A stretch of 64,000 bases of DNA, taken from positions 153,143 through 217,142 of IMG/VR virus record IMGVR_UViG_3300042895_001344; one strand, 5' to 3'. Below the pieces are notes generated by a model, which saw only the letters and a program-made list of their open reading frames with translations, searched no databases and was not told the DNA's origin. Shown one piece after another: positions 46,198 through 62,202 of the stretch (positions are counted from its first letter, which is position 1; the number at the start of each line of letters is the position of its first letter). Position numbers and translations under genes: made by a program.

Positions 46198-46228
46198 TCC
46201 TCGAGGTTTATACTTCGGGGATTTTTTT
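46198..46228 (+). terminator. Intrinsic terminator at the convergence with the envelope module
   Basis: TCCTCGAGG-TTATA-CTTCGGGGA plus T-run. Confidence 0.75.
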
Positions 46229-47835: not shown

Positions 47836-47841
47836 TATTCG

Positions 47842-48570
47842 TTATTCAAATTTTTCATTATAATCTTTTATTGTAAATGGACAATATACTGAATATCTAA
47901 TGTCTTTTGATAAGTTTTTAGTTACCTCATGTACGTAATTGTATTTTTGATGTTCAATCAACACACATTTATTAAAATTTGGTAAAACTTCTATTTCACC
48001 ATTTTTAGTATAAAGTTTTAATAATGACCCATCATCAAATTTTCTATCGTTGTTTATAAAAAATACAGCAGTAAATAATCTTTCACCATTTGGGTCACTA
48101 TCAAAATGTTTCTTAATAAATGATCCTTCTGGATATACATTTATATGACCAACTAATGAATCTTTAAAATTTGGTTTAATTTTTTTATTAAATAATTCAA
48201 ATAATATGTTTTCGTAACATTTAGATATTAGATCATAAATTCCATTAGTTTTTAACAAACTACTATTATGTGTTAATAAAAAATTAAAATAATCATTTTC
48301 ATTAAATCCATATTGATCATTTAATTTATTTAAAAAACAATAATCTGTATAATTCAATGAATATGAATCTACTATTTTATTGTATCTTATTGGATCTATT
48401 TCTTTAACTTTATTTTCCACATCATTTGACCATTGTAAAAACCCTAACGAGCTATTAATCTCATCAACATTTACGTCAAAATTAATTAATGATGTATTAA
48501 GTTTAACAAACTCATCTTTAGTAAGATAATTTTCTAAATCAAATATTTTATAGTCAAAATCTAAATTCAT
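47842..48570 (-). CDS. 2OG-Fe(II) oxygenase (prolyl-hydroxylase-like)
   Basis: HFD, GSLL, VHEV, RYS. Confidence 0.8.
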   Translation of the reverse strand: MNLDFDYKIFDLENYLTKDEFVKLNTSLINFDVNVDEINSSLGFLQWSNDVENKVKEIDPIRYNKIVDSYSLNYTDYCFLNKLNDQYGFNENDYFNFLLTHNSSLLKTNGIYDLISKCYENILFELFNKKIKPNFKDSLVGHINVYPEGSFIKKHFDSDPNGERLFTAVFFINNDRKFDDGSLLKLYTKNGEIEVLPNFNKCVLIEHQKYNYVHEVTKNLSKDIRYSVYCPFTIKDYNEKFE

Positions 48571-49415
48571 TATTTGTTATTTAAACCTATTGATATTTGT
48601 GTGTATCCTCTTATTGGGTCGGTATCTAATTTTAATGTAACGAATTTAAAATCTTTTATAATACCAACTTTAAATGTGGTAAATGATGAATTTGATTTTG
48701 GAAATGAAATACCACCTAAGTCATCTTTACCTTGCCATCTAATAACTTCATTACCAAATCCTACCATACCATGTATTCCTATTTTACCAATTCTTTTACC
48801 ACCACCAACATAGAAAGTTGATTCTTTTTTCCAATCTTCTTTACTAAGTGGAAAGTCGACATTGTTAATTTGACCATATGGATAATAGCTATTTTGGTCT
48901 ATTGCGTAAGTCATTACATAATCCATAATAAAATATCCTCTCTTGTCACCAATCGTTCCCCAATAAGAAATTTGTTTATTATTTGTATGTCCAAATCCAA
49001 AGGAGGTATAAACACGTTCTTTTCTAATAGTATCTCTTTTTCCACCTTCATATATATGAATTACACTTCTTTGTCTCCATCCGTAATCATCATACCAAAT
49101 ATAAGGCATTGGTTGATACCATCCCCAGTTTCCCCAATAGTAACCAAATTGATTATTTCTATTCCAATTTTGAACACGTACTCTACCACGTTGGTCTGGT
49201 TGTGATTGTTGAGGTTGATTATTTCTCCAACTACTTACATTATTTTGTTGTGGTACAGATGGTTGAACTCTTGTTTGAGTTGATTGTGATGTTTGTGATG
49301 ATGCTGGAACACTTCCACCAGTTTGTCTCCAAGAACTAACTTGGGAATATAACATTATTGTGCAGAATAATATTAATATTAATATTAAACCTGTAACTAA
49401 TAAAACCTTTTTCAT
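48570..49415 (-). CDS. Exported protein, probable small outer-membrane beta-barrel
   Basis: Signal peptide ...MLYS|Q; Gln-rich and aromatic low-complexity region; alternating Gly/aromatic strands. Confidence 0.55.
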   Translation of the reverse strand: MKKVLLVTGLILILILFCTIMLYSQVSSWRQTGGSVPASSQTSQSTQTRVQPSVPQQNNVSSWRNNQPQQSQPDQRGRVRVQNWNRNNQFGYYWGNWGWYQPMPYIWYDDYGWRQRSVIHIYEGGKRDTIRKERVYTSFGFGHTNNKQISYWGTIGDKRGYFIMDYVMTYAIDQNSYYPYGQINNVDFPLSKEDWKKESTFYVGGGKRIGKIGIHGMVGFGNEVIRWQGKDDLGGISFPKSNSSFTTFKVGIIKDFKFVTLKLDTDPIRGYTQISIGLNNK

Positions 49416-49591: not shown

Positions 49592-49595
49592 ATAA

Positions 49596-49603
49596 TATAA
49601 ATA
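49596..49603 (-). promoter_or_regulatory. TATTTATA putative late-promoter motif
   Basis: Just after a terminator and before pspC. Confidence 0.55.
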
Positions 49604-49607
49604 TTAA

Positions 49608-49631
49608 AAAAGGGGTTATAAAACCCCTTTT
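49608..49631 (-). terminator. Intrinsic terminator
   Basis: AAAAGGGGTT-4 nt-AACCCCTTTT. Confidence 0.75.
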
Positions 49632-49849
49632 AAACATATTCTATCTAATTCTTCTTGCCTTAAACCTATGGTTGAATCTATTTGTCCTCCGTCGGATAAA
49701 ATGTTTACTAAATAAAGACCAAATTTTTTATCACTTATCTCAATTTCTTGCCCATGTATAAACCCCATATCCATCAATTTTAATCTCATACATGGTGTAC
49801 AATTTTCACAAGGATTATTTTGTGGAACGTCCACTACTTCATATTTCAT
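49616..49849 (-). CDS. feoA: FeoA-like SH3 protein with an N-terminal CxxCxxC
   Basis: RLKLMDMGFIHGQEIEI...IGLRQEE. Confidence 0.7.
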   Translation of the reverse strand: MKYEVVDVPQNNPCENCTPCMRLKLMDMGFIHGQEIEISDKKFGLYLVNILSDGGQIDSTIGLRQEELDRICLKGVL

Positions 49850-50577
49850 TATTTCGTGAATATACCTTTTTTAATCATTCTATCAAGGATGTTAGCACAT
49901 GCAATGTCTAAAGCTTTCTTTGTTGCAATACTAATTGTTGATTGATTGAACTTAATTGGGTCAATGGTCGCATCCGATAAAAGGGTTAACTCTCTTTTTG
50001 TTGTTGCCTCACCTAAACCTGACCCACCAAATACTACACCTGTTTCAGCATCAGTAAATCTAACCTGAAGACCTATACGAGTTACCATATTGTCTTTAAT
50101 ACCGTCTTTTAGGTTAATAGTTTCGTCTTCTGACACCGAGTAGTCATAACACTCAATCGTAACAAAATACTTCGCCAAATTGATTTTACCACGACCGTCT
50201 AATTTATTCTCAGAAATACCCGCAGCAGACGCTTGGAATTGTTTTACCATCCTATTCTTAATTTCTGTCTTATCCTCGGTAAATTTGAATCTATTTAAGT
50301 TTTCAAGGTATTCCATTGAAATGTTAGCAACACCCAAACCAACACGTTTTTCTTTTAACTCAGGATACATTTCATACATCTCATCAGAAATGCCTGCCTT
50401 TAATATTTGAATTGGAATTTGAGGACCGTCGTAATCCATGTAAGCACTTATGTCTCGTTTTTTTTCAAAATCTGCTTTATACTGTTCGGTTTTTGTTGAT
50501 CCTATTGTTTGTCCCATTGCATTATCTGCAATTAAACAGGTTAAAATAAAAATTAAAAATATTATTAAATGTCTCAT
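49849..50577 (-). CDS. CsgG/HfaB-like exported protein
   Basis: Signal peptide ...NAMG|Q; GVANISMEYL.N.NRFKFTE; IGLQVRFTDAETGVV.G.G.G; C-terminal A.KKAL helix. Confidence 0.65.
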   Translation of the reverse strand: MRHLIIFLIFILTCLIADNAMGQTIGSTKTEQYKADFEKKRDISAYMDYDGPQIPIQILKAGISDEMYEMYPELKEKRVGLGVANISMEYLENLNRFKFTEDKTEIKNRMVKQFQASAAGISENKLDGRGKINLAKYFVTIECYDYSVSEDETINLKDGIKDNMVTRIGLQVRFTDAETGVVFGGSGLGEATTKRELTLLSDATIDPIKFNQSTISIATKKALDIACANILDRMIKKGIFTK

Positions 50578-50586
50578 AGTTTTATA

Positions 50587-51330
50587 TTAAGGGTTCCATT
50601 TATTTAATGCACTTATGTAGTTACTCGTCATATGATCTTTGGCAGTATTACCTGTGAATACAGCTTTAAGATATTCACCAACTCTTTGCCAATCAATCAT
50701 CCATTTTTTAACTTTACCCTCACTATCAATACGTAATTCAGTATTAACGTGGTGATATCCAATATTTGGGGCACGAGTAACAACATCTAAATTATTAACA
50801 ATCCTTAATGATTCAATTGATGATTTATCAAAGTTCTGTTTGAATACTTTATTACCAACTCTTGGACTACCGATAGTACAACATATAATTTTATTTGATT
50901 TATAAATTGAATAAATCTCATATGCACATAAGGTAGAAACTGCAGCTCCCAAACTGTGACCGCAAACAATAATATTATCAACTTCACCCTCCCCACCTAA
51001 TGTGGATAATGCTTTTTCAAATGATTTATAAGTTTCGTCTTTAACAGCGTCCCAAGATGATTTAAATCCAATGTGAACTTTTTCACCATCTTGAACAAAT
51101 GGAACTTTATCAATTGATGCGTCGTTTTGGAAATCCTTTTTAGAAGAACTTCCTCTCCAAACGATATAGATAGATTTATCCTTTGTGGCAACAAATCCTT
51201 GTGTATCTGTTTTTTTATCGTCAATCCATTTAATTAATTTTAATCTTTGTGCTTTAAAATCAATGTCTTTTTGTTCTGAATATACTTTCTCGGTTAAACC
51301 GACATTGTATAGTATTTCGTTTTTTGTCAT
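50587..51330 (-). CDS. Class-3 lipase (alpha/beta hydrolase)
   Basis: VWRGS, VHIGF, GHSLG, TIGSPRVG, VNNLDVVTRAP, Y.HV, DH. Confidence 0.92.
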   Translation of the reverse strand: MTKNEILYNVGLTEKVYSEQKDIDFKAQRLKLIKWIDDKKTDTQGFVATKDKSIYIVWRGSSSKKDFQNDASIDKVPFVQDGEKVHIGFKSSWDAVKDETYKSFEKALSTLGGEGEVDNIIVCGHSLGAAVSTLCAYEIYSIYKSNKIICCTIGSPRVGNKVFKQNFDKSSIESLRIVNNLDVVTRAPNIGYHHVNTELRIDSEGKVKKWMIDWQRVGEYLKAVFTGNTAKDHMTSNYISALNKWNP

Positions 51331-51354
51331 TGTGTATTTGTTTTTGTTATAATA

Positions 51355-51591
51355 TTACTGTCTTGCTGGCCATATACCACGAGTGGCTATTATGTATTTC
51401 ATACCATCCATAGGTGGTTCCATTTTAGGTACCGCAAATAAATTTGGTGTTGCTCCGTATCTATCTTGCAGTAATACATATAACGCCTCATTTTCCCTTA
51501 TGTTTAATAATTGTCCGTTGCATTCTACATATCCTTGAGGAGCGTAGCCTCCTGCAAATAATTTAATTGCCCCAATTAATTCTTCTTCCAT
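51355..51591 (-). CDS. Stand-alone phage tail-collar domain protein
   Basis: IGAIKLFAGGYAPQGYVECNGQLL...ALYVLL...YG; YIIATRGIWP. Confidence 0.85.
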   Translation of the reverse strand: MEEELIGAIKLFAGGYAPQGYVECNGQLLNIRENEALYVLLQDRYGATPNLFAVPKMEPPMDGMKYIIATRGIWPARQ

Positions 51592-51594
51592 AGT

Positions 51595-52668
51595 TTATTG
51601 TGTTTTTGTTTTAGATTGATCACCCTTCTTTAAAAATATATCAAATATTGTTTTAGGACTGTATTCTACAAGTAATATTAAACCCTTCCTCAACGTAGAG
51701 TTTTTTACAACGTGATTTAAAATATCTTTAATAACCTCTTTAATGGCGAAATTTTTAGTGTCAAAATATGTTCCATCAAAATATCTTGGACTTGTTCCCT
51801 CACCACCTGGTGAACCGTGATGAGCACCTATAGAGGTACGCCAATAATCAGCATGATTTTGCCATTCAGGAACTGAAACCAATTCAGGTGAATCAAAAAA
51901 TAAATTCCACGATAATACATTACCCTTTTGTAACATATTACCAGTACCTAAGTTAAAAAGATTTAAAAAGTATTGATTAAACTTATCTAATTTGTGATCA
52001 CTTGTTGTTACCATTCCTCCTATTTCTACATTGATATGTCCTGTACTATATGCTTCTTCCTTTATTGCAAATTCAGGATTTTTAAATCTTGGTGATAAAC
52101 CCTTTCCGAGTTGAAATATAGGTTCTTTAGGATTTCCTGGTAGATGTGTTAAAACACGAATAGCATTTTCTTTGTTGATAGGATACTTACGAGAACTGTA
52201 TTTTAATAATGGCCAAATTGCTCTTAATAGACCACCTTGATTTTCACCTGGTGTTAACCAAATTTTTCCCTCAACCATCATATCCGCAGCAATTTCCTTT
52301 GTGTCTTCATTAACCCATCCTCTTTGTCCCGTAACTGTTACTTCCACATTGATACAAATCTCATCTCCAATCCACATCCCTTGTTGAGGACAGATTATGG
52401 AATAAATTCTACCTTCATTGGTATATCCTATTCTTGAAATATAAGGAGCAAATTGTACATAACAACGTTTTGGGTCTTTTTCCCCATTTAGGGTATTCCA
52501 ACTAAACATTGGCCATTTAACACCCCATTGTCTTTGTAGTAAATTAATGTTATCCATATTACCCAACATAGGTAATGAGGTTAAATCTGTGGTAGGATAT
52601 AGCATTTTCTTTTGTTTTTCAGATGGAAAACCACCTTGCCATCCCGTAGGAATTTGTTCGTTTGTCAT
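51595..52668 (-). CDS. Hypothetical protein
   Basis: 357-aa ORF; TATTTATA at 52679-52686 upstream. Confidence 0.7.
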   Translation of the reverse strand: MTNEQIPTGWQGGFPSEKQKKMLYPTTDLTSLPMLGNMDNINLLQRQWGVKWPMFSWNTLNGEKDPKRCYVQFAPYISRIGYTNEGRIYSIICPQQGMWIGDEICINVEVTVTGQRGWVNEDTKEIAADMMVEGKIWLTPGENQGGLLRAIWPLLKYSSRKYPINKENAIRVLTHLPGNPKEPIFQLGKGLSPRFKNPEFAIKEEAYSTGHINVEIGGMVTTSDHKLDKFNQYFLNLFNLGTGNMLQKGNVLSWNLFFDSPELVSVPEWQNHADYWRTSIGAHHGSPGGEGTSPRYFDGTYFDTKNFAIKEVIKDILNHVVKNSTLRKGLILLVEYSPKTIFDIFLKKGDQSKTKTQ

Positions 52669-52691
52669 ATTCTTTTAATATAAATACACAA

Positions 52692-52716
52692 AAAAGGGAG
52701 TTTTTAACTCCCTTTT
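52692..52716 (-). terminator. Intrinsic terminator
   Basis: AAAAGGGAGTT-TTT-AACTCCCTTTT. Confidence 0.8.
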
Positions 52717-52719
52717 ATA

Positions 52720-52968
52720 CTAACCTTCTGTTTCTTCTTTCTTTTTGTGAGAGAATTTATCCAAAGTATCTGCACCCATTCCAATTCCCGTGATTAACAT
52801 CACCGCATTCACCAATTCAGGTGATGGAGCGAAATCCGCGTGAGAGAACGAATTTAAAATCATCGTAATACATAGGAATAAAGCACCTATCATTGCTATT
52901 ACCGGCTTTACCGATATTGATCCTCTTTCATCTTTGAAAATTTCAATAACCCATTGTTTAAAATTCAT
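52720..52968 (-). CDS. Two-TM small membrane protein (holin-like)
   Basis: Two hydrophobic helices, charged C-terminal tail. Confidence 0.55.
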   Translation of the reverse strand: MNFKQWVIEIFKDERGSISVKPVIAMIGALFLCITMILNSFSHADFAPSPELVNAVMLITGIGMGADTLDKFSHKKKEETEG

Positions 52969-52997
52969 AGTTTTTTATTTTTTGTCTTTTGTTTATT

Positions 52998-53666
52998 TTA
53001 TCCTTCCGTATGCATTTCTGCATTTTCATCTTTAATTTTACCACATTTTAAACACTCCTCAATGCCATCACCATCCAAGTCACCCCAAACGTGTTCACAT
53101 TGTCTATGTGCGAAATACATATCTATTTTACCGTCACCATCAAAATCAATACCATCTATTGTACCATCACCATCTTCATCAACCTCAACACCTGTTCTTG
53201 GTTGTGATTTGAAAGGACTTTCAACAACTTGAGGATTATTTGGTTCTGATTTTACCTCTACTTTGTTTGCCTCAATTAAGTTGATTTCATGTGCGTTCTT
53301 TGCGGCTTGCACAAATGCATCTGGAATCAATGGAGTGTTATTTGGTGGAGTTACAGGCATATCAGCAGTATTACTCATTGACGTACCATCTTCTTCGTCC
53401 ATTTTCTGAACTAACATCTTATCCTTATCAGTATCACTAAACCAATAGTCAATGATTTTACCATAACTACCGATAAACGCTCCTAATAATAATAAAAGAA
53501 GTTCTTTCCATTCTCCTTCAATCGTAGATTTATTTAATATACCAAAGAACATTCCTCCAATAATAATCATAAATCCACCTAACACTATCGCAGTGATATA
53601 CCACCTGCGTTTCATCATATTTGCTAATAAATCCTTAAATCCGCTTGGCGGTTGTTCATTACTCAT
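52998..53666 (-). CDS. Two-TM membrane protein with DxDGDG Ca-binding-like repeats and a CxHxW...CxxC tail
   Basis: DEDGDGTIDGIDFDGDGKID; CEHVWGDLDGDGIEECLKCG. Confidence 0.65.
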   Translation of the reverse strand: MSNEQPPSGFKDLLANMMKRRWYITAIVLGGFMIIIGGMFFGILNKSTIEGEWKELLLLLLGAFIGSYGKIIDYWFSDTDKDKMLVQKMDEEDGTSMSNTADMPVTPPNNTPLIPDAFVQAAKNAHEINLIEANKVEVKSEPNNPQVVESPFKSQPRTGVEVDEDGDGTIDGIDFDGDGKIDMYFAHRQCEHVWGDLDGDGIEECLKCGKIKDENAEMHTEG

Positions 53667-53683
53667 CTTTTTTTAATTTAAAA

Positions 53684-53998
53684 TTACCATTTAGGTGCTT
53701 CTTCTTTAAACTCATCACCTTCTTTTTTCTTAGGTTTTGGTGCTGGCGCCGGTTTAGCACTACCGTCTCCACCTTTATTGATGATTACAGTTTTACCACC
53801 ACCCGATTGTTGAGTTTGTGAATTGGTAATGTTGATTACAGGTGCCGCTTGTTGAACGGGAGCCTCTTTTTCGTCACCACCTGTTAATTTTGTTGTAAAC
53901 CAACCACCCACACCTAATGTGATGGTGCTTACTAAACCGATAATGATGTTCTTAATTGAACCACCTGTACTTTCTGATTTTTCTTGTTCTTCTGCCAT
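53684..53998 (-). CDS. Single-TM protein with a Pro/Gly/Lys-rich tail
   Basis: IIIGLVSTITLGVGGWF followed by low-complexity sequence. Confidence 0.65.
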   Translation of the reverse strand: MAEEQEKSESTGGSIKNIIIGLVSTITLGVGGWFTTKLTGGDEKEAPVQQAAPVINITNSQTQQSGGGKTVIINKGGDGSAKPAPAPKPKKKEGDEFKEEAPKW

Positions 53999-54030
53999 AA
54001 TTTTGTGTTTTTTGTCTTTATATAATTATC

Positions 54031-54399
54031 TTAAATTTTATTAAAATCTGTAATTCCTAACATATTACCCGCAACATCGTATAATGCAATCCTATACGCT
54101 GAAGATGGTAAAGCGGATGTATACACCCTTAAAATGTTATCACCAACCTTAACCTCACTTGTTGATTTTGATACCACTCTATTGGAAATATCAAAAATCT
54201 TAACGGTTACAGTTTGAGCAACATCACTTTTTATGTTCATTGCAACTTCATTTGTTATAAATGAAGTTTCTAATTTTAATCCCACTGAACTTGAGATTTT
54301 AAGGTTGTCACTAATCACTTGTGGTTGCATTGGTATGTCTACTTTTCTACATCCAACAAGTAAGATTAATCCAAAGAGTACGAGAGATACTTTTTTCAT
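54031..54399 (-). CDS. Lipoprotein consisting of a T9SS-CTD-like Ig domain
   Basis: LVGC lipobox; VTVKIFDISNRVV...G.N.L.V.TSALPSSAYRIAL. Confidence 0.6.
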   Translation of the reverse strand: MKKVSLVLFGLILLVGCRKVDIPMQPQVISDNLKISSSVGLKLETSFITNEVAMNIKSDVAQTVTVKIFDISNRVVSKSTSEVKVGDNILRVYTSALPSSAYRIALYDVAGNMLGITDFNKI

Positions 54400-54411
54400 T
54401 TTTTGTCTTGT

Positions 54412-54765
54412 TTAATTTATAATTATTCTTGTTTTACCTATTTGATTATTATTTTGATCCTTTAACACGACACTTAGGTTTTTTGTCGGTAAAGTATTAG
54501 TAAATATTTTAAGAGAGTTTAATCCTACTTTACCAGTAAACCTTTCCCTTGATACTACTTGGTTTTGAACCGTATCAATCATTGTTAAAGTATATACTCC
54601 TCCTGTAGTTAAATTAATATTAATAACATCCCCGTTTTTTACCTTATTTTCAGATAAGGAGAAAAATTCCACATTTGTCGGTGACACAGGTGTAAACGGA
54701 ACCATTTTTTTGCACGATATTATAAAAACCATACAACACAATAATATAATTTTGATACGTTTCAT
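54412..54765 (-). CDS. Lipoprotein paralog with a T9SS-CTD-like domain
   Basis: IISC lipobox; YTLTMID...VV...G.NSLKIFTNTLP. Confidence 0.55.
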   Translation of the reverse strand: MKRIKIILLCCMVFIISCKKMVPFTPVSPTNVEFFSLSENKVKNGDVININLTTGGVYTLTMIDTVQNQVVSRERFTGKVGLNSLKIFTNTLPTKNLSVVLKDQNNNQIGKTRIIIN

Positions 54766-54768
54766 ATT

Positions 54769-55662
54769 TTAAAATTGAAAGTTTGTTCCTATCATAAATA
54801 GAATTGGATTACTCTTTTTATACCCAACCGATTCACTTAATTTATTCCAAGTTGTGTTATATCTAACATTAGTATTCAATACAAATTTTTTAGTTATTTT
54901 CCAATCAATAGATGTACCATAATATAAGTCCAAATTGAAATCATCTACATATGCTAAATCCGATTCAGTCCCATCTTTGAATACTTTGTAGATATCACTC
55001 ATTGCAAATATTTGTGGTGAGATGTTTACTCTCTTTGTTTTGAATGTATACGTATACATTGCCATACCTCTATAACTAATTTGACTTGATGATGGCATTT
55101 GTGGATATATTAAATCTTTAAAATCACCATTTTCATCTACTATATATTTTCCTTCCCATTGACCTTGATAACTTCCCCAAAACGATTTTGACGCAATCAC
55201 ACTATAACCAAATGTTCCAAACTTTTTAGTTCTGAATACATCAATGAATGATAGAGAAATATCTTTTTGAAAATCAAAATCGGTTGAATAGAATGATTGT
55301 AATGTAGTAGTTCTTGTATTCGTATTTCTACTGAAACCATAACCCACACCATAGTAGTTCCATATTGGATTTATTGATGATGCGAATGAGTGACCCCATT
55401 TACCATTTTTAGATGATTTACTATATCCTAAATTTAAGGTAGTAGATACTTGTTTTCCAATTACACCTACTGATAAATTTGAGGATGAAAGAACATCTTT
55501 TGAAAAATCAATATATGACTCTAATATACCTAAATTATTCCAATCACCACTTTCTCCAAATAATTCTTTTGGTGATAGTTGTAAGGTATCTGGTTTTACA
55601 ATTTGTGCGTTTGTAACAAATGTTGTCAAAATTAGTGACAGAATTAATAATAGTTTTTTCAT
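54769..55662 (-). CDS. Outer-membrane beta-barrel protein
   Basis: Signal peptide ...VTNA|Q; amphipathic strands; ISPQIF; C-terminal Phe (GTNFQF). Confidence 0.75.
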   Translation of the reverse strand: MKKLLLILSLILTTFVTNAQIVKPDTLQLSPKELFGESGDWNNLGILESYIDFSKDVLSSSNLSVGVIGKQVSTTLNLGYSKSSKNGKWGHSFASSINPIWNYYGVGYGFSRNTNTRTTTLQSFYSTDFDFQKDISLSFIDVFRTKKFGTFGYSVIASKSFWGSYQGQWEGKYIVDENGDFKDLIYPQMPSSSQISYRGMAMYTYTFKTKRVNISPQIFAMSDIYKVFKDGTESDLAYVDDFNLDLYYGTSIDWKITKKFVLNTNVRYNTTWNKLSESVGYKKSNPILFMIGTNFQF

Positions 55663-58271
55663 TAATTTATTTTTATTTTTAATGATTTTCCATCTTTATT
55701 AACTGCGTCCGTTGAACCTATTGAAATTAAACCCAATATGTTATCCAATTTTGTGTTTGACGAAAATGAAATCTTATATGTTGTTGTCTTATCTAAACTT
55801 GTACTACCATCACTTACCAAAGAACCTAAATTAATGTAATTACCCTTGTTGGTTGCATAGTTGGTAGGTGAACCTTTTGTGGTAAATTGTATTCCTTTAA
55901 AATTTAAGACCGAATTATCGTAGTTTAATTGAAATTGAGTTCCTACCACGTTTTGTTGTAATGGGTCAAATGTGATGTAAGCATAAACACTATCACCAAT
56001 TACTTCGGTCATAATAGATGCGTTGATGTCAGTTGATATTGGTGTACTCATTGATGTTCTAACTGTCATCGTTGTGATATTATTTGATGGAGGAGTTGCC
56101 GAATGTGATAAGTTTACATCACCTTTCCAACTAACAGCCAAATCGTAGTTATAACTTATTACATTATCTAATAAACTAAAATTATAAGTTTTTCCTGCAA
56201 AATTTTGAAAAGAACTCCAAGTTGACTTACCAATTTTATTATAAATTGAATCAGGTATCAAACGTATTGTATTATCCAAAGTATAATTACTAACTAAGTT
56301 TTGTACACCCGTTAAATTTTGTAATAATTTGAAACAATCCGCTTCATTAAATAAACCATCATCATTTACATCTGCGTTTTTATATTGAATTCCGTAAGTA
56401 AACTCATTACCACTTTGATTTCCAAATATACCACCATTTGCCAATTCCTTAAATGCCAAATACACATCTGATACTGTTACGATACTATTATACAAAGTTT
56501 TTAATTGTGTACTATCATATTCTTGTAATTCCATTTTGTGTTGTTTGAACGCACCTTGTTGGGTAAGTCCAATACCACATGCAAATGCATAGTCGGTATT
56601 TGAACCATTCATATTTCTAATATATTGATTATATGCAGAAGTTCCATCGGTTACTTTTGTTAATGGAGATGGAACAGTATATTGTGCCCAACCATTATTG
56701 TCATGTGATGTATATGTAACAGGCCCATCATACGCATCTAATATTTTTACATTTGATATTTTCGTTGGGTCTATACTTCCAACTTGTCTCATATCAATTA
56801 ACAATCTACTATTACCATTTAACCAACTTGCATTTGGATTTGTATAAGACCACTCTACCCCACCCGGAGATATAGTTGCTTTGTATGATGCAGGTGCCGA
56901 TACGAATTGGTAACTTAATCCCCATCCACCATAACCCGATGTTGATACTCCATTACGAGTTGAACCAACATATTCACTTAACCCCTGTACTACTTTAATA
57001 TAAACTTCTTTTGTTTGTCCGTCTGATATTACACCAGCATGTACCGCTGCGGCTGGAATATATGAATCACTTGTATAGATATCGGTTCCCCATATTGCTC
57101 CACCTGTTGTACCTGTTATTGTTATTCTATATATCTTACCAATATCCGATTCATTAAATTGTTGCATATCGGATGTTCCTGCTGTTAATGGAATACCAGT
57201 TGTATAAATCTTTGAAGTATCTATTTGATTTGAAAGAAATACTTTACCCAAACCACTCAATGATTTATAACCATCCGCCGCTGCCCAATTTGAATATGTG
57301 TCGTTTCTTTTGAATATCTGTGCTAAGAATTTTGTTTTATCTATTGAAGTATTAAACTTAAATCCAAATAATGCTTTTATAGTTTCTCCGTTTGAATGTG
57401 TTACTGAATTGGTATAGAACTCCGTAAATGTTGCATCATCGGGATTAGACCAAGTTCCATATTCAATTACATATGGGTTACTCCAATTGTTTGATAAGTC
57501 ATTCCATTGATTACCATTCCATTTTGTTACTGCATAATCCTCACTATGATTATATCCGTTTGGTTCACCATTTGCCCAATTATTATACACACCTGGTCGG
57601 TTTCCGGCAGTTGGTCCGTTGGATGTTTTCATCACAGTCCCCTTTTCAGGACCCGCATCAATTACCCAAGTTCCATCTATAACTTCATCTGTTGCTGCAA
57701 ACCATATATTTGATTGTGGTACATTAGCTTGAATAAATAAATCTTCCGATGATGATGTTAGTGTTAATAGATAACCCGTCTGTCCTTTGAATGTTGTTGT
57801 TAACGCAATTGCTCTTGCGTTTGTATAAGTTGTACCGGTTGTTACGGGTTTGTAAAAGTGACCATTTACTCCATTGAAATAATATCCTGGTTGATTAACA
57901 GTTGCGGCCACTGAAATATTAATATCACCAATTACTGTTCCTGTGTTTATTTTTAGAGACGCTAACGCAGTATTAATACTTGCCATTGTTCCAGTTACCA
58001 CTAAACGAGTTTTATTACCACTTAAAGTAAATCCACTTGCTGCCGTTAAACCCGTTGTTGTGTTTAATACGAATGTTGTACCTGATGGTGGATTGACTAA
58101 ACTTATAGAAGCAAGTAAAGTAGATGTTGCACCAAATCCACTTAATGAAAATCCACTAGCGTCTTGTCCTGTGGTATTCACAGTAAATGATTTAGGGTCT
58201 GGAGCCGTTACTGACTGACCAAACCCTAAAAATGATATAAATAAAAATAATACTACTAATAGTTTCTTCAT
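55662..58271 (-). CDS. Exported adhesin-like protein: C-type lectin + LCCL + dockerin-like + cohesin-like domains
   Basis: Signal peptide ...LGFG|Q; GYLLTLTS.SE, WANGEPN, WNDL; IWGTDIYTSDS.I.AAAVHAG; ADVNDDG; GTQFQLNYD. Confidence 0.8.
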   Translation of the reverse strand: MKKLLVVLFLFISFLGFGQSVTAPDPKSFTVNTTGQDASGFSLSGFGATSTLLASISLVNPPSGTTFVLNTTTGLTAASGFTLSGNKTRLVVTGTMASINTALASLKINTGTVIGDINISVAATVNQPGYYFNGVNGHFYKPVTTGTTYTNARAIALTTTFKGQTGYLLTLTSSSEDLFIQANVPQSNIWFAATDEVIDGTWVIDAGPEKGTVMKTSNGPTAGNRPGVYNNWANGEPNGYNHSEDYAVTKWNGNQWNDLSNNWSNPYVIEYGTWSNPDDATFTEFYTNSVTHSNGETIKALFGFKFNTSIDKTKFLAQIFKRNDTYSNWAAADGYKSLSGLGKVFLSNQIDTSKIYTTGIPLTAGTSDMQQFNESDIGKIYRITITGTTGGAIWGTDIYTSDSYIPAAAVHAGVISDGQTKEVYIKVVQGLSEYVGSTRNGVSTSGYGGWGLSYQFVSAPASYKATISPGGVEWSYTNPNASWLNGNSRLLIDMRQVGSIDPTKISNVKILDAYDGPVTYTSHDNNGWAQYTVPSPLTKVTDGTSAYNQYIRNMNGSNTDYAFACGIGLTQQGAFKQHKMELQEYDSTQLKTLYNSIVTVSDVYLAFKELANGGIFGNQSGNEFTYGIQYKNADVNDDGLFNEADCFKLLQNLTGVQNLVSNYTLDNTIRLIPDSIYNKIGKSTWSSFQNFAGKTYNFSLLDNVISYNYDLAVSWKGDVNLSHSATPPSNNITTMTVRTSMSTPISTDINASIMTEVIGDSVYAYITFDPLQQNVVGTQFQLNYDNSVLNFKGIQFTTKGSPTNYATNKGNYINLGSLVSDGSTSLDKTTTYKISFSSNTKLDNILGLISIGSTDAVNKDGKSLKIKIN

Positions 58272-58274
58272 AAA

Positions 58275-59927
58275 TTATTCAACAATCAAATTAATCTTGT
58301 TTCCGTTTCCATCAACCGCGTCAGCTAAAACTGTATAAAATAAACCCGCCGTATTTGTTATGGTTTCTTTCGGTATAAAAGTTAATTTGTAAGGTGTCCC
58401 TATTTTAATTCTACCAGTTTTCATTTGATCCATTGAACCGAATGTTAATCTACCATCTCCATTTGTTGAGAAGTTAGTTACGTTTGGACCGGCGTCAAAT
58501 GATATATTATCAAATGTTAATTTTGAATTGTCATATTGTAAGATTACCTCTAATCCCGCTAATCCGTCTTTTGTTAATGTTCCCGTTAATACAACTTTAC
58601 CATTAACAATTGTAGAGTTTAATCCTAATGTTGCCTTTTCAATTGTTGGTGTATATGACATTGATTGAACTGAAAATGATTTGATTGATGAGGTACTTTT
58701 TTCATTAATTGAGTTTAAGTAAGTTCCTGCTGCAATTCTACTTGCGATTACATCAGGGTCAGATGAATGAGACCAATCCAAATCACCACCCCATGCGTAT
58801 ACCATATCTACCGATTGATTTGATGATGTTACTTTTGTTTTGTAAGTAGGTACACCATCTAACCAACTTTGATTTAATAAACCACTATACCATTTGAATA
58901 AACCACTATTTGTACTCAATGGAATCCATGCACTATCTTTTACATTAGCGATACCCATTACATATGCAAACATATAATATGAATCACTTTCACTAAACAC
59001 ACTTTTACTCTTTGTAATTTGACCTATATTCTTTTGTAATTGTGGTCTTGTAAAATAAGTTTTTACACCCGCGATATCCGTTTGTGAAATACCTAAAAAT
59101 GCTTTATATGCGTCTGATACTGTTATAATGTTATTCATAAAAGTTTTTCCTGTTGCACCATACATCCACACCGCCAAACTATCTCCCACTTTCACTTCTG
59201 TTGTAAATGTCGCCTCACCACTTGCATCTAATACTTTTGTTGCAATTGGTGTTACTGTAAAATCAATTGTACCATCTGTTTTTATTGGAAATAATGCAAC
59301 ACTGTGTGCGGTAATATCATATCCTGTTGGGAATAAAACTCTTAGTTTGAACTGAGACGTATTACCAACAACATTTGTTAAAGACATTGTACCTGGATCA
59401 GTTGTAATTGGTGTAATGTATGCACTTGTTGCATCAATTGAATATGATAAGTCTAATTTATGAATGTCGGTATACGCACCCAAATCTTTGATTACATATT
59501 TTTGAGTTGCAACATCTCCGTTGATAGATGCATCGGTTCTTTGAACAGTTAATTGACCAACATTCCAATCTGCGTTGGCTGCGTAACCCCATGGAGATAT
59601 TAGATATTGTGCATATAAATCTTTAGCTGTAATACTATTTGCTGCACTTGAAGTAAATTTATAAGACGACCAACCTGTGTAGAATGTTTGAACTGATGTT
59701 CCTTGTGAGAACGTCGTTGAAACATATGAAAGTGCCTTATTGTTAAATTGATATCTCAACCAAAAATAACGAGGCGTGGTTGTACCTCTCGCAACCGTGT
59801 ATTTAACTGAAACCGTATCACCAACCTTTAACCCTGTTGTAGGTGTCACAGATTGGTTGACAGTTAATTGTGCATTTGTTGCTATGGATATTACTAGTAT
59901 TCCAAGTAGCGTTAATAGTTTTTTCAT
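58275..59927 (-). CDS. Exported protein with dockerin-like and cohesin-like domains, paralog of 55662..58271
   Basis: Signal peptide ...ATNA|Q; ITVSDAY; GGDLDWSHS; GLEVILQYDNSKLTF. Confidence 0.7.
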   Translation of the reverse strand: MKKLLTLLGILVISIATNAQLTVNQSVTPTTGLKVGDTVSVKYTVARGTTTPRYFWLRYQFNNKALSYVSTTFSQGTSVQTFYTGWSSYKFTSSAANSITAKDLYAQYLISPWGYAANADWNVGQLTVQRTDASINGDVATQKYVIKDLGAYTDIHKLDLSYSIDATSAYITPITTDPGTMSLTNVVGNTSQFKLRVLFPTGYDITAHSVALFPIKTDGTIDFTVTPIATKVLDASGEATFTTEVKVGDSLAVWMYGATGKTFMNNIITVSDAYKAFLGISQTDIAGVKTYFTRPQLQKNIGQITKSKSVFSESDSYYMFAYVMGIANVKDSAWIPLSTNSGLFKWYSGLLNQSWLDGVPTYKTKVTSSNQSVDMVYAWGGDLDWSHSSDPDVIASRIAAGTYLNSINEKSTSSIKSFSVQSMSYTPTIEKATLGLNSTIVNGKVVLTGTLTKDGLAGLEVILQYDNSKLTFDNISFDAGPNVTNFSTNGDGRLTFGSMDQMKTGRIKIGTPYKLTFIPKETITNTAGLFYTVLADAVDGNGNKINLIVE

Positions 59928-59929
59928 AG

Positions 59930-60577
59930 TTATTTAACAAATAATTTAGTTATTAATTTATCCGCCGATTTTTTTAAGGCGTTACTAAGTGACGTTTGAT
60001 TAAATTGACCTCCCTCATCAACAATTAATGTTGACATTGATATTTCTGAAGATGATTCTTCGACCATTATTTCCTTTTCTTTTTTACCATCCTTATATAA
60101 AGTTCCTTTCATACGAATGACAACTTCTTCTTCATTTTTGTGAAAAACAGAAATGTTCTTTTTTGTTGTAAGAACATCTAAATAAATGATTTGAACTTTT
60201 AATTTGTATGGGGCTGAAGGTGTTAAATCATAACCCTTTTCTTGTAAGAATTCTTCCAATGTATTTTTTACACCGAAAGCTAAATTTCTATTACCTGCCA
60301 ATTTACCCATCTTAACTTCATTGGTAACACTCTCCACCCAAATATGGTCTTCAGCCACATAGAATATATTTTCAGGTGAGTTCTTGAATGTACCATCAAT
60401 CCTCCACGAAATCCAATTTGAGATGTCTCTTGTTATTTCTCTTTGGCCTGAAAATTCCAAAACCGCCATGGATATACCGAATATCATTCCAAATATTACC
60501 CATGATATCGCAAAGTATAAAAAACCTAAAAAGATTTTTTCTTTAATATTAATTGATAGTGTTCTTAATTTTTCCAT
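59930..60577 (-). CDS. Membrane-anchored CsgG-like protein (paralog of 49849..50577)
   Basis: N-terminal TM helix; LAFGVKNTLEEFL; FNQTSLSNALKK. Confidence 0.55.
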   Translation of the reverse strand: MEKLRTLSINIKEKIFLGFLYFAISWVIFGMIFGISMAVLEFSGQREITRDISNWISWRIDGTFKNSPENIFYVAEDHIWVESVTNEVKMGKLAGNRNLAFGVKNTLEEFLQEKGYDLTPSAPYKLKVQIIYLDVLTTKKNISVFHKNEEEVVIRMKGTLYKDGKKEKEIMVEESSSEISMSTLIVDEGGQFNQTSLSNALKKSADKLITKLFVK

Positions 60578-60664: not shown

Positions 60665-60672
60665 TATAAATA
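60665..60672 (-). promoter_or_regulatory. TATTTATA putative late-promoter motif heading the envelope operon
   Basis: 87 nt upstream of the ATG at 60577. Confidence 0.5.
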
Positions 60673-62109: not shown

Positions 62110-62202
62110 CAACGTGATAATCACTCCACGCAAGTGGTAAGCACCCGGCAGTAACACCGGGATGGCAATGTGGTTATTAAGAGGTAAGGAAAAGACTAAA
62201 AT

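What the first reader, a model, noticed from the sequence alone, without database searches (positions are those of the whole stretch)
49849..60577. Two CsgG-like proteins with different anchors and no lipobox
Seen: the 242-aa protein has a cleavable signal and two hairpin-like segments (YDYSVSEDETINLKDGIKDNMVTRIGLQVRF and GEATTKRELTLLSDATID) at the positions where CsgG contributes pore strands. The 215-aa paralog has an N-terminal TM helix instead. Established: canonical CsgG is a lipoprotein nonamer. Inference: a non-canonical pore, possibly with an inner-membrane-anchored ring and an outer-membrane ring stacked across the periplasm. CsgG-like folds also occur in non-pore periplasmic proteins, so pore formation is unproven.
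Basis: inference. Interest (0 to 1): 0.7.

Follow-up and report, generated by a model that had tools for sequence, protein, structure and literature searches.

The report
Phage CsgG-like pair, probably not a pore
A large lake-water phage that probably infects Bacteroidota carries two distantly related CsgG-type envelope proteins that are predicted to bind each other, but they lack the lipid anchor and membrane hairpins a CsgG pore needs, so they look like a periplasmic scaffold.

Summary
Protein A (49849-50577, minus strand, 242 aa) is a remote but full-length homologue of CsgG. It has a signal-peptidase-I type signal and no conserved lipobox. Protein B (59930-60577, minus strand, 215 aa) has an N-terminal membrane helix and a core of the same CsgG/PelC/LptE superfold.

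The pore reading is not supported. A's two hairpin regions are shorter than CsgG's, a third of their residues are charged, and they have almost no aromatic residues. The lipid anchor that CsgG needs for membrane insertion is gone.

New findings:
- The window is the end of a 217-kb T4-like phage contig from lake water.
- A and B are the first and near-last genes of a roughly 14-kb envelope-protein module that keeps its order in hundreds of related contigs.
- Bacterial relatives of A are lipoproteins. They sit in a three-gene operon with a second, non-lipidated paralogue and an outer-membrane barrel protein.
- B matches that second paralogue at profile level.
- B's membrane-anchor part is a separate small gene next to A in many related phages.
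- A complex prediction supports A-B binding (score 0.64, best control 0.17).

Best reading: a laterally associated A/B periplasmic assembly tied to the inner membrane. Its role in infection is unknown.

The parts
49849..50577 (-). Protein A, 242 aa: a non-lipidated member of the CsgG family
   Evidence: The ORF is. The protein itself has no Pfam hit, but 14 of 38 family members hit PF03783 CsgG. hhalign against E. coli CsgG gives 94.3% probability, E 1e-7. The AF2 model has pLDDT 79. The best solved match is CsgG, with Foldseek E 2e-6 and VIA Z 11.5.
50515..50577 (-). Signal peptide of A (residues 1-21), with the cut predicted before Gln22
   Evidence: 111 of 120 close homologues have a small residue followed by Q directly before the conserved mature N-terminus. 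This fits the Bacteroidetes Q-rule (PMC5837995). Cleavage is inferred, not shown.
50356..50367 (-). YPEL motif of A (residues 71-74), which aligns with Y51-P52 of CsgG's constriction loop
   Evidence: P72 is nearly invariant in the family. The alignment to CsgG is and the CsgG loop residues.
50083..50142 (-). Hairpin region 1 of A (residues 146-165), at the position of CsgG TM1
   Evidence: It is 20 aa and 35% charged, and every alternating face carries two charges. The family mean is 18.9 aa.
49951..50013 (-). Hairpin region 2 of A (residues 189-209), at the position of CsgG TM2
   Evidence: It is 21 aa against 31 in CsgG, has no aromatic residue, and its tail has low model confidence.
59930..60577 (-). 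Protein B, 215 aa: a membrane-anchor module fused to a CsgG/PelC/LptE-superfold core
   Evidence: The ORF is. PF03923 scores 24.7 bits, just under its cut-off of 25. The AF2 model has pLDDT 68. Fold matches are LptE-like proteins, PelC and CsgG, with Z 12.2-12.6.
60353..60577 (-). Anchor module of B (residues 1-75): cytoplasmic basic N-terminus, transmembrane helix, short periplasmic tail
   Evidence: In about 30 related loci this part is a separate ORF of 68-78 aa upstream of A, immediately upstream where no variable insert intervenes. In 16 loci it is fused to the core as here. No locus shows both forms.
59933..60352 (-). Core of B (residues 76-215)
   Evidence: In 23 related loci the core has its own Q-rule signal peptide. 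It matches the second paralogue of the bacterial operon at 96.9% probability, E 1.7e-10.
58275..59927 (-). 550-aa secreted protein with a cohesin-like C-terminal part
   Evidence: Its signal ends with Q at +1. Its C-terminal 290 residues are related to the 869-aa protein (E 5e-15).
55662..58271 (-). 869-aa secreted protein with LCCL, C-type lectin and cohesin-like domains
   Evidence: Pfam hits are and the signal.
54769..55662 (-). 297-aa protein with a signal peptide and a C-terminal Phe; a candidate outer-membrane barrel
   Evidence: This rests on sequence features only. No family hit was found. It is present in only some relatives.
54031..54765 (-). Two small lipoproteins of 117 and 122 aa, both with canonical lipoboxes
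   Evidence: The N-termini are. The 122-aa protein gives weak DUF3244 and Por_Secre_tail hits.
52720..53998 (-). Three inner-membrane proteins: 104 aa (one helix), 222 aa (two helices plus an acidic, Cys-rich tail), and 82 aa (two helices plus a charged tail, holin-like)
   Evidence: Sequences are. The 82-aa protein gives a weak holin_phiLC3 hit (E 0.02). All three are conserved in relatives.
52692..52716 (-). Terminator-like hairpin after the 82-aa gene
50587..52668 (-). Variable insert upstream of A: a 357-aa protein of unknown function and a class-3 lipase
   Evidence: Lipase_3 scores E 2.6e-27. The two genes are present in only 9 and 14 of the 80 A-centred loci.
49608..49631 (-). Terminator-like hairpin downstream of A
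48570..49415 (-). 281-aa secreted protein, Gln-rich and then beta-rich
   Evidence: The sequence is. It is present in 51 of the 80 A-centred loci. No family hit was found.
46228..47835 (-). 535-aa protein: signal peptide, small N-terminal domain, about 250 residues of Ala/Pro/Glu/Lys-rich spacer, and a C-terminal outer-membrane beta-barrel
   Evidence: For residues 330-535 the Atlas gives structural matches to DUF2490, YaiO and OMP_b-brl barrels (TM 0.72-0.74) and feature matches to Bacteroidota 'transporter' clusters and Phage_OMP. The gene is present in 72 of 80 loci.

Best explanation
A and B are the phage's versions of a two-paralogue CsgG-family pair. In bacteria that pair is encoded beside an outer-membrane barrel protein.

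A is exported by Sec and cut by signal peptidase I, leaving an N-terminal Gln. It therefore ends up as a soluble or peripherally bound periplasmic protein. It is neither an outer-membrane lipoprotein nor a beta-barrel pore.

B holds a related core close to the inner membrane through a fused anchor module. In sister phages that core is soluble and the anchor is a separate small protein encoded next to A.

The two cores bind side by side. B's first and last helices lie on the open face of A's beta-sheet, and A's N-terminal arm lies on B. This would give a heteromeric assembly, possibly a ring.

The assembly belongs to a conserved module of about twelve envelope proteins. My best guess, and it is only a guess, is that it serves as a periplasmic scaffold or adaptor for the module's outer-membrane barrels and secreted lectin- and cohesin-like proteins.

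What is shown: homology, fold, loss of the lipobox, gene linkage, and the fusion/fission of the anchor. What is predicted: A-B binding. What is inferred: absence of a pore, ring formation, and the role in infection.
For: - **Phage context.** The contig carries T4-type capsid, portal, terminase and prohead protease genes and is a 217-kb virus record.
- **A belongs to the CsgG family.** Evidence is.
- **The lipobox is ancestral and was lost.** Nearly all distant members have a ..GC..SC or ..AC lipobox, while the freshwater phage clade has a Q-type cut at the same place to within one residue. A marine phage relative still has the lipobox.
- **Bacterial operon.** In 33 loci from MAGs, mainly the FCB group, Desulfuromonadota and relatives, and Acidobacteriota, an A-like lipoprotein sits next to a second paralogue (about 20 loci; a signal peptide, mostly without a lipobox, by inspection of the N-termini) and a roughly 400-aa protein (22 loci). 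One representative of that protein was scanned and has a C-terminal OMP_b-brl domain.
- **B matches the second paralogue.** The profile of that paralogue matches B at 96.9% probability, E 1.7e-10, over 142 columns. The A-like profile does not match B (0.5%).
- **Module order is conserved.** Starting from A, 61 of 80 loci also hold B. Starting from B, 38 of 41 loci with enough flank also hold A.
- **The anchor is fused or split, never both.**
- **Complex prediction of full-length B with A residues 23-242.** The score was 0.64 and the best of 3 controls was 0.17. That mark was reached by 58 of 80 solved complexes and 2 of 110 mismatched pairs; these counts hold only roughly because my own alignments were used. 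The three runs agree in at least 86% of contacts, and the partner's pLDDT is at least 71.
- **The predicted interface is conserved on B.** B's invariant residues numbered N104 and E108 in alignment A2 (true N105 and E109, because A2's first row lacks the Met) touch A's invariant Q171 and nearly invariant S186. B's interface is more conserved than the rest of its core (permutation p 0.011).
- **The hairpins are unlike pore hairpins.**
- **Non-lipidated CsgG does not insert.** See PMC4389571.
- **Possible transcription.** Freshwater metatranscriptome contigs cover A and its neighbours at 85-99% identity. DNA carry-over is not excluded.
Against: - The complex prediction may only reproduce, from memory, the neighbour contact of solved rings of this fold. 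In that case it shows likeness, not binding (warning).
- On A's side the interface is not more conserved than the rest of the protein (p 0.22).
- B carries Lys where A has Q171, so a simple alternating ring is not obviously closed.
- The B model is of modest quality (pLDDT 68).
- Terminator-like hairpins suggest that A and B lie in different transcription units here.
- The most conserved motif of the A family (YPEL) aligns with CsgG's channel-lining loop. That is what one would expect if a lumen matters.
- Homology between the bacterial barrel protein and the phage barrel proteins is weak (54% probability over 35 columns).
- No experiment bears on localisation, stoichiometry or function.
Confidence: 0.55

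Rival explanations
1. A forms a CsgG-type beta-barrel ring in the outer membrane and B forms a second ring anchored in the inner membrane. The two are stacked to make a channel across the periplasm.
For: A is homologous to CsgG along its whole length, and its hairpin segments sit at the TM1 and TM2 positions. The AF2 model draws a long hairpin at 137-176. The YP of the constriction loop is conserved. B is anchored in the inner membrane.
Against: The hairpins are shorter than CsgG's, highly charged, and lack aromatic girdle residues. Two family members have a hairpin 1 of only 12 residues. A has no lipid anchor, which CsgG needs to insert (PMC4389571; PMC13397529). The predicted A-B contact is lateral, helix layer on sheet layer, and not end to end. 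B's linker of about 35 residues keeps its core near the inner membrane.
Confidence: 0.08
2. A lysis device. The A/B pair, together with the neighbouring one-helix and two-helix membrane proteins and the small lipoproteins, bridges the inner and outer membranes like a spanin complex. It would disrupt the outer membrane at the end of infection.
For: The module holds an 82-aa protein with two helices and a charged tail that gives a weak holin hit (E 0.02). In a marine relative, a 108-aa type-II membrane protein overlaps the start of a lipobox-bearing A homologue. That is the usual layout of inner- and outer-spanin gene pairs. B is inner-membrane anchored and is predicted to bind A.
Against: A has lost its lipid anchor in this clade. 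Known outer spanins are small and proline-rich (my own knowledge), not 220-aa globular proteins. No endolysin was recognised in the module. The bacterial homologues sit in ordinary chromosomal operons with a barrel protein.
Confidence: 0.12
3. A surface or periplasmic exclusion device. The assembly alters the infected cell's envelope to block adsorption or DNA entry by other phages, as the ring-forming lipoprotein TraT blocks conjugative entry.
For: Decameric TraT is among the fold matches (Z 7.0 for A and 9.9 for B). The module is full of envelope and surface proteins. T4-type phages are known to encode envelope exclusion proteins (my own knowledge).
Against: The TraT match is no better than the matches to a dozen other families of the same fold. 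Nothing in the data speaks specifically for exclusion.
Confidence: 0.1
4. A and B act separately as monomeric periplasmic binding or regulatory proteins of this fold, for example LpoB-like modulators of host cell-wall synthases. Their gene linkage would then reflect only shared regulation.
For: LpoB profiles hit 6 of 38 members of the A family. Atlas and AFDB neighbours include LpoB clusters. Non-lipidated CsgG is described as a soluble species (PMC4389571).
Against: The complex prediction passes its controls, with invariant residues at the contact. The anchor module alternates between fusion to B and adjacency to A. The two-paralogue arrangement is conserved in bacteria.
Confidence: 0.12

Closest known systems
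CsgG, the curli secretion channel (Pfam PF03783; PDB 4UV2, 4UV3, 6L7A, 6LQH)
   Same: A aligns with CsgG from the signal/lipobox region to the C-terminal helix (94.3% probability, E 1e-7). CsgG is A's best fold match. The YP of the constriction loop and a polar-x-Arg motif on strand beta4 are shared. In the predicted complex, A's N-terminal arm contacts its neighbour, as a review describes for CsgG protomers (PMC4389571).
   Different: A has no lipobox. Its hairpin regions are 20 and 21 aa against 24 and 31, are charged, and lack aromatics. N55 and F56 of the constriction are not kept. The contig has no curlin, CsgE or CsgF. A itself does not reach the Pfam threshold. It is encoded by a phage and paired with a divergent paralogue.
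An uncharacterised bacterial three-gene operon: a CsgG-like lipoprotein, a non-lipidated CsgG-like paralogue, and an outer-membrane barrel protein of about 400 aa (mainly FCB group, Desulfuromonadota and relatives, and Acidobacteriota MAGs)
   Same: A matches the lipoprotein member (E 3e-79) and B matches the second paralogue (E 1.7e-10). In both settings, genes for outer-membrane barrel proteins lie next to the pair.
   Different: In the phage the lipoprotein member has lost its lipid anchor. The second paralogue has lost the middle helix and has gained, in some phages, an inner-membrane anchor. Ten further envelope genes lie between the two. Homology between the barrel proteins is not established. 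I found no description of this operon, though I did not search the literature for it specifically.
PelC, a dodecameric lipoprotein ring on the PelB barrel (PDB 5T0Z, 5T10, 9H80), and LptE, the plug of the LptD barrel
   Same: Both have the same two-layer alpha/beta fold (Z 9.5 for A; Z 11.9-12.6 for B against PelC; LptE-like Cj1090c Z 12.2). Both are non-pore members of the fold that work on an outer-membrane barrel, which is the mode of action I propose.
   Different: PelC and LptE are lipoproteins, and A and B are not. No profile-level sequence link to either family was found. No PelB- or LptD-like partner was identified. Ring formation and barrel docking were not tested for A or B.
YajG (Pfam PF03923, Lipoprotein_16)
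   Same: This is the only Pfam family that B touches (E 2.2e-5, residues 88-149). NCBIfam PRK11627 also gives a weak hit (E 0.013).
   Different: The score of 24.7 bits is below the cut-off of 25. Only 62 residues are covered. B is not a lipoprotein. Its link to the bacterial CsgG-like paralogue is stronger.

Membership tests
CsgG/HfaB family (PF03783) | Sequence homology to the family profile | tested here: met
   For A the link is remote but covers the full length. hhalign of the A family against E. coli CsgG gives 94.3% probability, E 1e-7, over 226 columns. 14 of 38 family members hit PF03783, the best at 1.9e-17. A alone is below threshold. B does not match CsgG directly (0.2%). It is linked only through the bacterial paralogue.
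CsgG/HfaB family (PF03783) | The alpha/beta periplasmic-domain fold | tested here: met
   For A, the top hits are CsgG 4UV2 and 6L7A (E 2e-6, TM 0.44-0.49) and 6LQH (Z 11.5, 159 residues, rmsd 3.4 A). For B's core, 6LQH scores Z 12.6, tied with PelC.
CsgG/HfaB family (PF03783) | N-terminal lipobox and an acylated Cys that targets the protein to the outer membrane | tested here: not met
   A has a Q-type signal-peptidase-I site and its Cys14 is not conserved. B has a transmembrane helix and no Cys. Distant bacterial members of A's family do have the lipobox.
CsgG/HfaB family (PF03783) | Two amphipathic hairpins per protomer, long enough to build the 36-stranded barrel | tested here: not met
   Judged by sequence only, the regions are 20 and 21 aa against 24 and 31, 33-35% charged against 17-23%, with 1 aromatic residue against 8. 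The family means are 18.9 and 18.6 aa, with a minimum of 12. This is an inference. No oligomer model or experiment was available.
CsgG/HfaB family (PF03783) | Constriction loop with Y51, N55 and F56 | tested here: inconclusive
   Y71-P72 of A align with Y51-P52, and P72 is nearly invariant. N55 aligns with Lys, and F56 falls in a gap.
CsgG/HfaB family (PF03783) | Ring oligomer of eight or nine protomers | not testable with these tools
   The complex tool takes at most 6 chains and 1000 residues. Only the A-B pair was run.
Curli (type VIII) secretion system | Partner genes for curlin subunits, CsgE and CsgF | tested here: not met
   PF07012, PF10627 and PF10614 give no match at E<=10 in the 217-kb contig. 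The contig is estimated to be 65% complete.
PelC / LptE type barrel-accessory lipoproteins | Same fold, a lipid anchor, and a cognate outer-membrane barrel that the protein docks on or plugs | tested here: inconclusive
   The fold is matched. The lipid anchor is not met. Barrel proteins are encoded in the module, but docking was not tested and no PelB- or LptD-like protein was recognised.
YajG (PF03923) | Score above the Pfam gathering threshold, and a lipoprotein signal | tested here: not met
   B scores 24.7 bits against a cut-off of 25, over 62 residues, and has no lipobox.
Two-component spanin | A type-II inner-membrane protein plus a small outer-membrane lipoprotein that bind across the periplasm, encoded in a lysis cassette | tested here: inconclusive
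   B is a type-II membrane protein predicted to bind A. However, A has no lipobox and is large and globular. There is a weak holin lead nearby. No endolysin was found in the module.

The most novel reading that the evidence does not exclude
The module builds a phage-encoded structure that spans the host envelope. It would combine an inner-membrane anchor (B's N-terminal module), a heteromeric ring of two CsgG-family paralogues in the periplasm, and outer-membrane barrels, one of which carries a spacer of about 250 residues that resembles TolA. Infected Bacteroidota cells would use this structure to export or hold the module's lectin-, dockerin- and cohesin-like proteins on their surface. That would be a CsgG-derived machine that works without a CsgG barrel. 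It would also give a first function to the uncharacterised bacterial three-gene operon it came from.
Probability: 0.2. Interest if true: 0.8.

Novelty: new variant of a known kind. Interest (0 to 1): 0.5.

Why it matters
CsgG is known as a lipoprotein that forms its own outer-membrane barrel. Here a whole branch of the family, in bacteria and in phages, appears to have kept the periplasmic body and the conserved central loop without the barrel. This branch comes as a pair of paralogues next to a separate barrel protein.

The phage copies show a clean switch from a lipoprotein signal to a Bacteroidota Q-type signal at the same position. They also show a fission/fusion of a membrane anchor that ties the two proteins together.

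The phages are very common in lakes. The metagenome protein database holds thousands of homologues of A and B, 505 and 392 viral contigs encode relatives of A and B, and lake-water and freshwater runs hold the locus. They spend about 14 kb on envelope proteins whose purpose is unknown.

Working out this pair would say something about how large phages of Bacteroidota rebuild the host envelope. It would also give a handle on an unstudied bacterial operon.

Tried and rejected
**Searches that found nothing useful**
- Direct family searches of A in Pfam, NCBIfam and PHROGs gave nothing.
- Profile searches of the A family, the B family and the bacterial barrel protein against PDB sequences gave nothing meaningful.
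- Megablast of the region against deposited phages found no match. The capsid protein finds only distant T4-type phages, at most 44% identity.
A 10-sequence subset worked.
- A family scan of the other module proteins found only weak leads.
- Two look-ups of distant A homologues landed on 1-kb contigs without context.
- Literature. No paper describes phage CsgG-like proteins beyond a remark in NanoporeDB that a few viral homologues exist. A 2025 paper on large aquatic phages of Bacteroidota ('moraphages', PMC12619734) does not mention such genes, and I did not test whether this contig belongs to that lineage. One look-up of the original CsgG structure paper failed because the paper is not held.

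**Ideas tested and dropped**
- Homology between the bacterial 400-aa barrel protein and the phage's 535-, 281- and 297-aa proteins. Only 54% probability over 35 columns was found for the 535-aa protein and nothing for the others, so this is not claimed.
- An apparent in-frame fusion of the anchor module to A in locus L054. This was an error of my ORF script: a stop codon separates the two genes.
- The T4 late-promoter octamer. It occurs 21 times against 13 expected, and 4 of 100 shuffles reach that count. It is suggestive near gene starts but was not pursued.

**Not attempted**

Full report
**Setting**

The window is the last 64 kb of a 217-kb virus contig that is estimated to be 65% complete. 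It encodes a T4-type major capsid protein, portal, large terminase and prohead protease, a ClpB-like ATPase, an RNA ligase, and five tRNAs. Deposited phages are only distant relatives, with capsid identity of at most 44%. There is no nucleotide match.

Related contigs reach 324-336 kb. Lake-water and freshwater metagenomes hold the locus almost word for word.

Six proteins of the region have a signal-peptidase-I type signal: the 550-, 869-, 297-, 281- and 535-aa proteins and A. In all six, Gln follows the predicted cut. This is the 'Q-rule' described for Bacteroidetes (PMC5837995, PMC10653852). The Atlas neighbours of the 535-aa protein's barrel are also mostly Bacteroidota. I therefore take the host to be a freshwater member of the Bacteroidota. 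This is an inference.

**The observation**

Protein A (242 aa) has a signal peptide that ends AMG|Q. Of its 120 closest homologues, 111 keep a small residue followed by Q directly before the conserved mature N-terminus. The Cys inside the window protein's signal is not conserved, and only 10 of the 120 show anything like a lipobox.

Protein B (215 aa) has four basic residues followed by a hydrophobic helix of about 25 residues, and no Cys.

The residue ranges I used for those hairpins (mature 134-154 and 184-208) are my recollection. One search printed the sequence there and confirmed Y51, N55 and F56 in the 47-58 loop.

**What A is**

A has no direct hit in Pfam, NCBIfam or PHROGs. An exhaustive search against representatives clustered at 50% identity found 214 relatives. 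In an alignment of 38 of them, 14 hit Pfam CsgG (best 1.9e-17) and 6 hit LpoB.

The family profile aligns with E. coli CsgG at 94.3% probability, E 1e-7, over 226 columns. The AF2 model has pLDDT 79. Its best solved match is CsgG, with Foldseek E 2e-6 and VIA Z 11.5 over 159 residues. PelC, CT253, FlgT, LptE and others of the same fold follow. Protein-language-model neighbours are CsgG/HfaB and LpoB clusters.

A is therefore a remote member of the CsgG family.

**What B is**

B touches Pfam PF03923 (YajG) just under threshold, at 24.7 bits against a cut-off of 25. Its model is weaker (pLDDT 68). The core, from residue 76 to the end, has the beta-alpha-beta-beta-beta-alpha layout of the same superfold.

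By Foldseek, LptE-like proteins lead. By VIA, CsgG, PelC and Cj1090c tie at Z 12.2-12.6. AFDB clusters give the same mixed picture.

B does not match CsgG by profile. It matches A's family only weakly (62% probability, E 7.6e-5), and the alignment skips A's middle helix.

**The bacterial source**

A subset of the A alignment found 33 loci. They lie in MAGs mainly of the FCB group (Bacteroidota, Ignavibacteriales, Cloacimonadota, KSB1, Fibrobacterota, Chitinispirillum and relatives), Desulfuromonadota and related groups, and Acidobacteriota.

Clustering their neighbouring genes shows a recurrent trio:
- an A-like protein with a canonical lipobox;
- a second CsgG-like paralogue in about 20 loci, with a signal peptide and, by inspection of the N-termini, mostly no lipobox;
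- a protein of about 400 aa in 22 loci. One representative was scanned against Pfam, and its C-terminal part hits the OMP_b-brl barrel family.

Profile comparisons sort the phage proteins onto this pair:
- The lipoprotein profile matches A's family (E 3e-79) and not B's (0.5% probability).
- The second-paralogue profile matches B's family at 96.9% probability, E 1.7e-10, over 142 columns.
- The second-paralogue profile also matches A's family (E 3e-30).

B is therefore best seen as the phage's much-changed copy of the second paralogue.

**The lipobox was lost, not absent from the start**

Nearly all distant members of A's family have ..GC..SC or ..AC followed by Ala or Ser. The closest lipobox-bearing relatives have the Cys within one residue of where the phage protein has Gln22, in front of the same KTE..(A)xFE motif.

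One of these relatives sits on marine contigs that carry phage replication genes. There it lies next to a 646-aa protein with cohesin and type-IX-secretion sorting domains, a short homologue of the 222-aa protein, a secreted nuclease, and a 108-aa one-helix membrane protein. So phage copies with a lipid anchor exist. The freshwater clade swapped the lipoprotein cut site for a Q-type site.

The same module still has two proteins with canonical lipoboxes, the 117- and 122-aa proteins. The host machinery is therefore not the reason for the change.

**Why it is probably not a pore**

- Hairpin 1 of A is 5 residues shorter than CsgG's in the alignment. Hairpin 2 is about 10 residues shorter.
- The regions are 20 and 21 aa against 24 and 31. 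They are 35% and 33% charged against 17% and 23%. They hold 1 aromatic residue against 8.
- Every alternating face of hairpin 1 carries two acidic residues.
- Across the 38 family members the means are 18.9 and 18.6 aa. Two members have only 12 residues in hairpin 1.
- CsgG with its lipidated Cys mutated folds in the periplasm but does not insert (PMC4389571). A database study makes the same point for models that lack the anchor (PMC13397529).
- The contig has no curlin, CsgE or CsgF.

All of this is inference from sequence. One point runs the other way. The best-conserved motif of the family, YPEL followed by KRVG.G, aligns with CsgG's lumen-lining constriction loop. Y and P are kept, and N55 and F56 are not.

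**A and B belong together**

Gene order. In 80 loci fetched with A, the order recurs with 82-98% identity for A:
- B, then the 550- and 869-aa proteins, then (in some) the 297-aa protein;
- then the 117-, 122-, 104-, 222- and 82-aa proteins;
- then a variable insert, then A, then (in some) the 281-aa protein, then the 535-aa protein.

B is found in 61 of these loci. In 80 loci fetched with B, 38 of the 41 with enough downstream sequence hold A, 3.5-9.6 kb away.

Fusion and fission of the anchor. B's first 75 residues are fused to the core in 16 loci, as in the window. In about 30 loci they form a separate ORF of 68-78 aa upstream of A. The ORF is immediately upstream where no variable insert intervenes, for example L035 9731-9958 with A starting at 10001. 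In L036 the 357-aa and lipase genes lie between them. In 23 loci the core carries its own Q-type signal. No locus shows both the fused and the split form. A gene that is fused to one protein in some genomes and sits next to the other protein in sister genomes is classical evidence for a functional link.

Complex prediction. Full-length B with A residues 23-242 scored 0.64, against 0.17 for the best of 3 controls. That mark was reached by 58 of 80 solved complexes and 2 of 110 mismatched pairs. These counts hold only roughly because my own alignments were used. The runs agree in at least 86% of contacts, and the partner's pLDDT is at least 71.

Predicted contact. B's first helix, the following strand, the 175-181 segment and the last helix lie on A's strands beta3 to beta5 and on A's N-terminal arm (residues 26-37). 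B's invariant residues, numbered N104 and E108 in alignment A2 (true N105 and E109), touch A's only invariant polar residue, Q171, and the nearly invariant S186. On B's side the interface is more conserved than the rest of the core (p 0.011). On A's side it is not (p 0.22).

A's own first helix carries the same G..N...E spacing as B's. The same kind of contact could therefore chain A to A. I did not test this.

The tool warns that a pass for families with solved rings may be memory of those rings. If so, it shows a CsgG-like neighbour contact rather than proof of binding. The anchor part of B makes no confident contact with A in the model.

**The rest of the module**

- The 550- and 869-aa proteins share a C-terminal part of about 290 residues (E 5e-15). 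The 869-aa protein also has LCCL, C-type lectin and cohesin-like hits.
- The C-terminal 200 residues of the 535-aa protein form an outer-membrane barrel by structure and feature search. Before the barrel lies a spacer of about 250 residues rich in Ala, Pro, Glu and Lys.
- The 297- and 281-aa proteins have signals and beta-rich sequences, but no family hit.
- The 82-aa protein looks like a small holin, with a weak hit at E 0.02.
- The class-3 lipase, the 357-aa protein, a 2OG-Fe(II) oxygenase and the PhyH-like gene are present in only 7-14 of the 80 A-centred loci. I take them to be variable cargo.
- Terminator-like hairpins follow the 82-aa gene and A. This suggests three transcription units.
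- Short contigs from four freshwater metatranscriptomes match A and its neighbours at 85-99% identity and thin out in the gap after A. This is weak evidence for transcription, because DNA carry-over is not excluded.

**Mechanism and verdict**

I commit to the following with confidence 0.55. A/B is a laterally associated, heteromeric periplasmic assembly of two CsgG-family paralogues. It has no lipid anchor and no barrel of its own. It is held at the inner membrane by B's anchor module and acts within a conserved envelope module.

The role I think most likely is a scaffold or adaptor for the module's barrel proteins and secreted adhesin-like proteins. That would follow the way PelC and LptE serve their barrels. 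This step is the least supported.

Rivals, with my confidence in each:
- a spanin-like lysis bridge, 0.12;
- an exclusion device, 0.10;
- two independent monomeric periplasmic proteins, 0.12.

It is a new variant of a known kind. It is a real and widespread feature, and its function is open.

Noticed in passing
window 60353-60577; related loci such as L035:9731-9958, L044:9765-9995 and L017:9774-9998: The first 75 residues of B (a transmembrane helix plus a conserved W[KR][IVF][DN]G.[FY]KN tail) are a stand-alone gene of 68-78 aa upstream of A in about 30 related phage contigs, immediately upstream where no insert intervenes. In 16 contigs they are fused to B's core. No contig shows both forms.
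   Followed up: yes
window 46228-60577, N-termini of the 550-, 869-, 297-, 281- and 535-aa proteins and of A: Every signal-peptidase-I type signal in the module has Gln right after the predicted cut. This is the Bacteroidetes 'Q-rule' and points to a Bacteroidota host for this uncultured phage.
   Followed up: partly
L085-L117 (bacterial MAG contigs), e.g. L109:7363-9772 and L101:4957-7212: There is a recurrent bacterial trio: a CsgG-like paralogue with a plain signal, a CsgG-like lipoprotein, and a protein of about 400 aa. One scanned representative of that protein has a C-terminal OMP_b-brl barrel. Some loci add a protein with a weak FlgT_N hit (E 2e-4, below the Pfam cut-off). I know of no description of this operon.
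   Followed up: partly
L201:3556-7425 (marine metagenome contig with phage replication genes): A marine phage relative keeps a lipobox on its A homologue. It encodes the homologue beside a 646-aa protein with cohesin and type-IX-secretion sorting domains, a secreted Endonuclease_NS, a 104-aa homologue of the N-terminal half of the window's 222-aa protein, and a 108-aa one-helix membrane protein whose stop overlaps the start of the A homologue.
   Followed up: partly
window 46228-47835: This 535-aa protein has a signal peptide, a small N-terminal domain, about 250 residues of low-complexity spacer (Ala-Lys/Asp repeats, a Pro run, then Glu-Lys repeats) and a C-terminal outer-membrane barrel. The spacer also creates long spurious ORFs in other frames (46887-47225, 46988-47632, 47289-47594).
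   Followed up: partly
window 55662-59927: The 550- and 869-aa secreted proteins share a C-terminal part of about 290 residues. It holds a D-x-N-D-D-G-type calcium-loop motif, which resembles a dockerin, followed by a cohesin-like domain. They might pair with each other.
   Followed up: no
window 52720-52968: This 82-aa protein has two membrane helices and a highly charged C-terminal tail. It is 88-98% identical in relatives and gives a weak hit to holin_phiLC3 (E 0.02). It is a possible holin inside the module.
   Followed up: no
window 52998-53666: This 222-aa protein has two membrane helices and a tail with repeated D-x-D-G-D-G calcium-binding-like motifs and four Cys/His in a zinc-ribbon-like spacing. 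In a marine relative only the first 104 residues are present.
   Followed up: no
window 47842-48570, 50587-52668 and 60773-61555: A 2OG-Fe(II) oxygenase, a 357-aa unknown protein with a class-3 lipase, and a PhyH-type dioxygenase are present in only 7-14 of 80 related loci. They are variable cargo inserted into or beside the conserved module.
   Followed up: partly
window, 21 sites, e.g. 60665-60672, 52679-52686, 49596-49603, 32550-32557 and 34384-34391: The octamer TATAAATA, or its reverse complement, lies a few to about 180 bases upstream of many gene starts. These include B, the 357-aa gene, the 281-aa gene, the portal and the terminase. Two of the sites sit right after terminator-like hairpins. 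The enrichment is modest: 21 sites against 13 expected, with 4 of 100 shuffles reaching 21.
   Followed up: no
window 40325-42412: A full-length two-ring AAA+ chaperone of the ClpB type is encoded by the phage.
   Followed up: no
window 61694-62893: A cluster of five tRNA genes (Thr, Asn, Met, Ser, Glu) lies right after the module.
   Followed up: no
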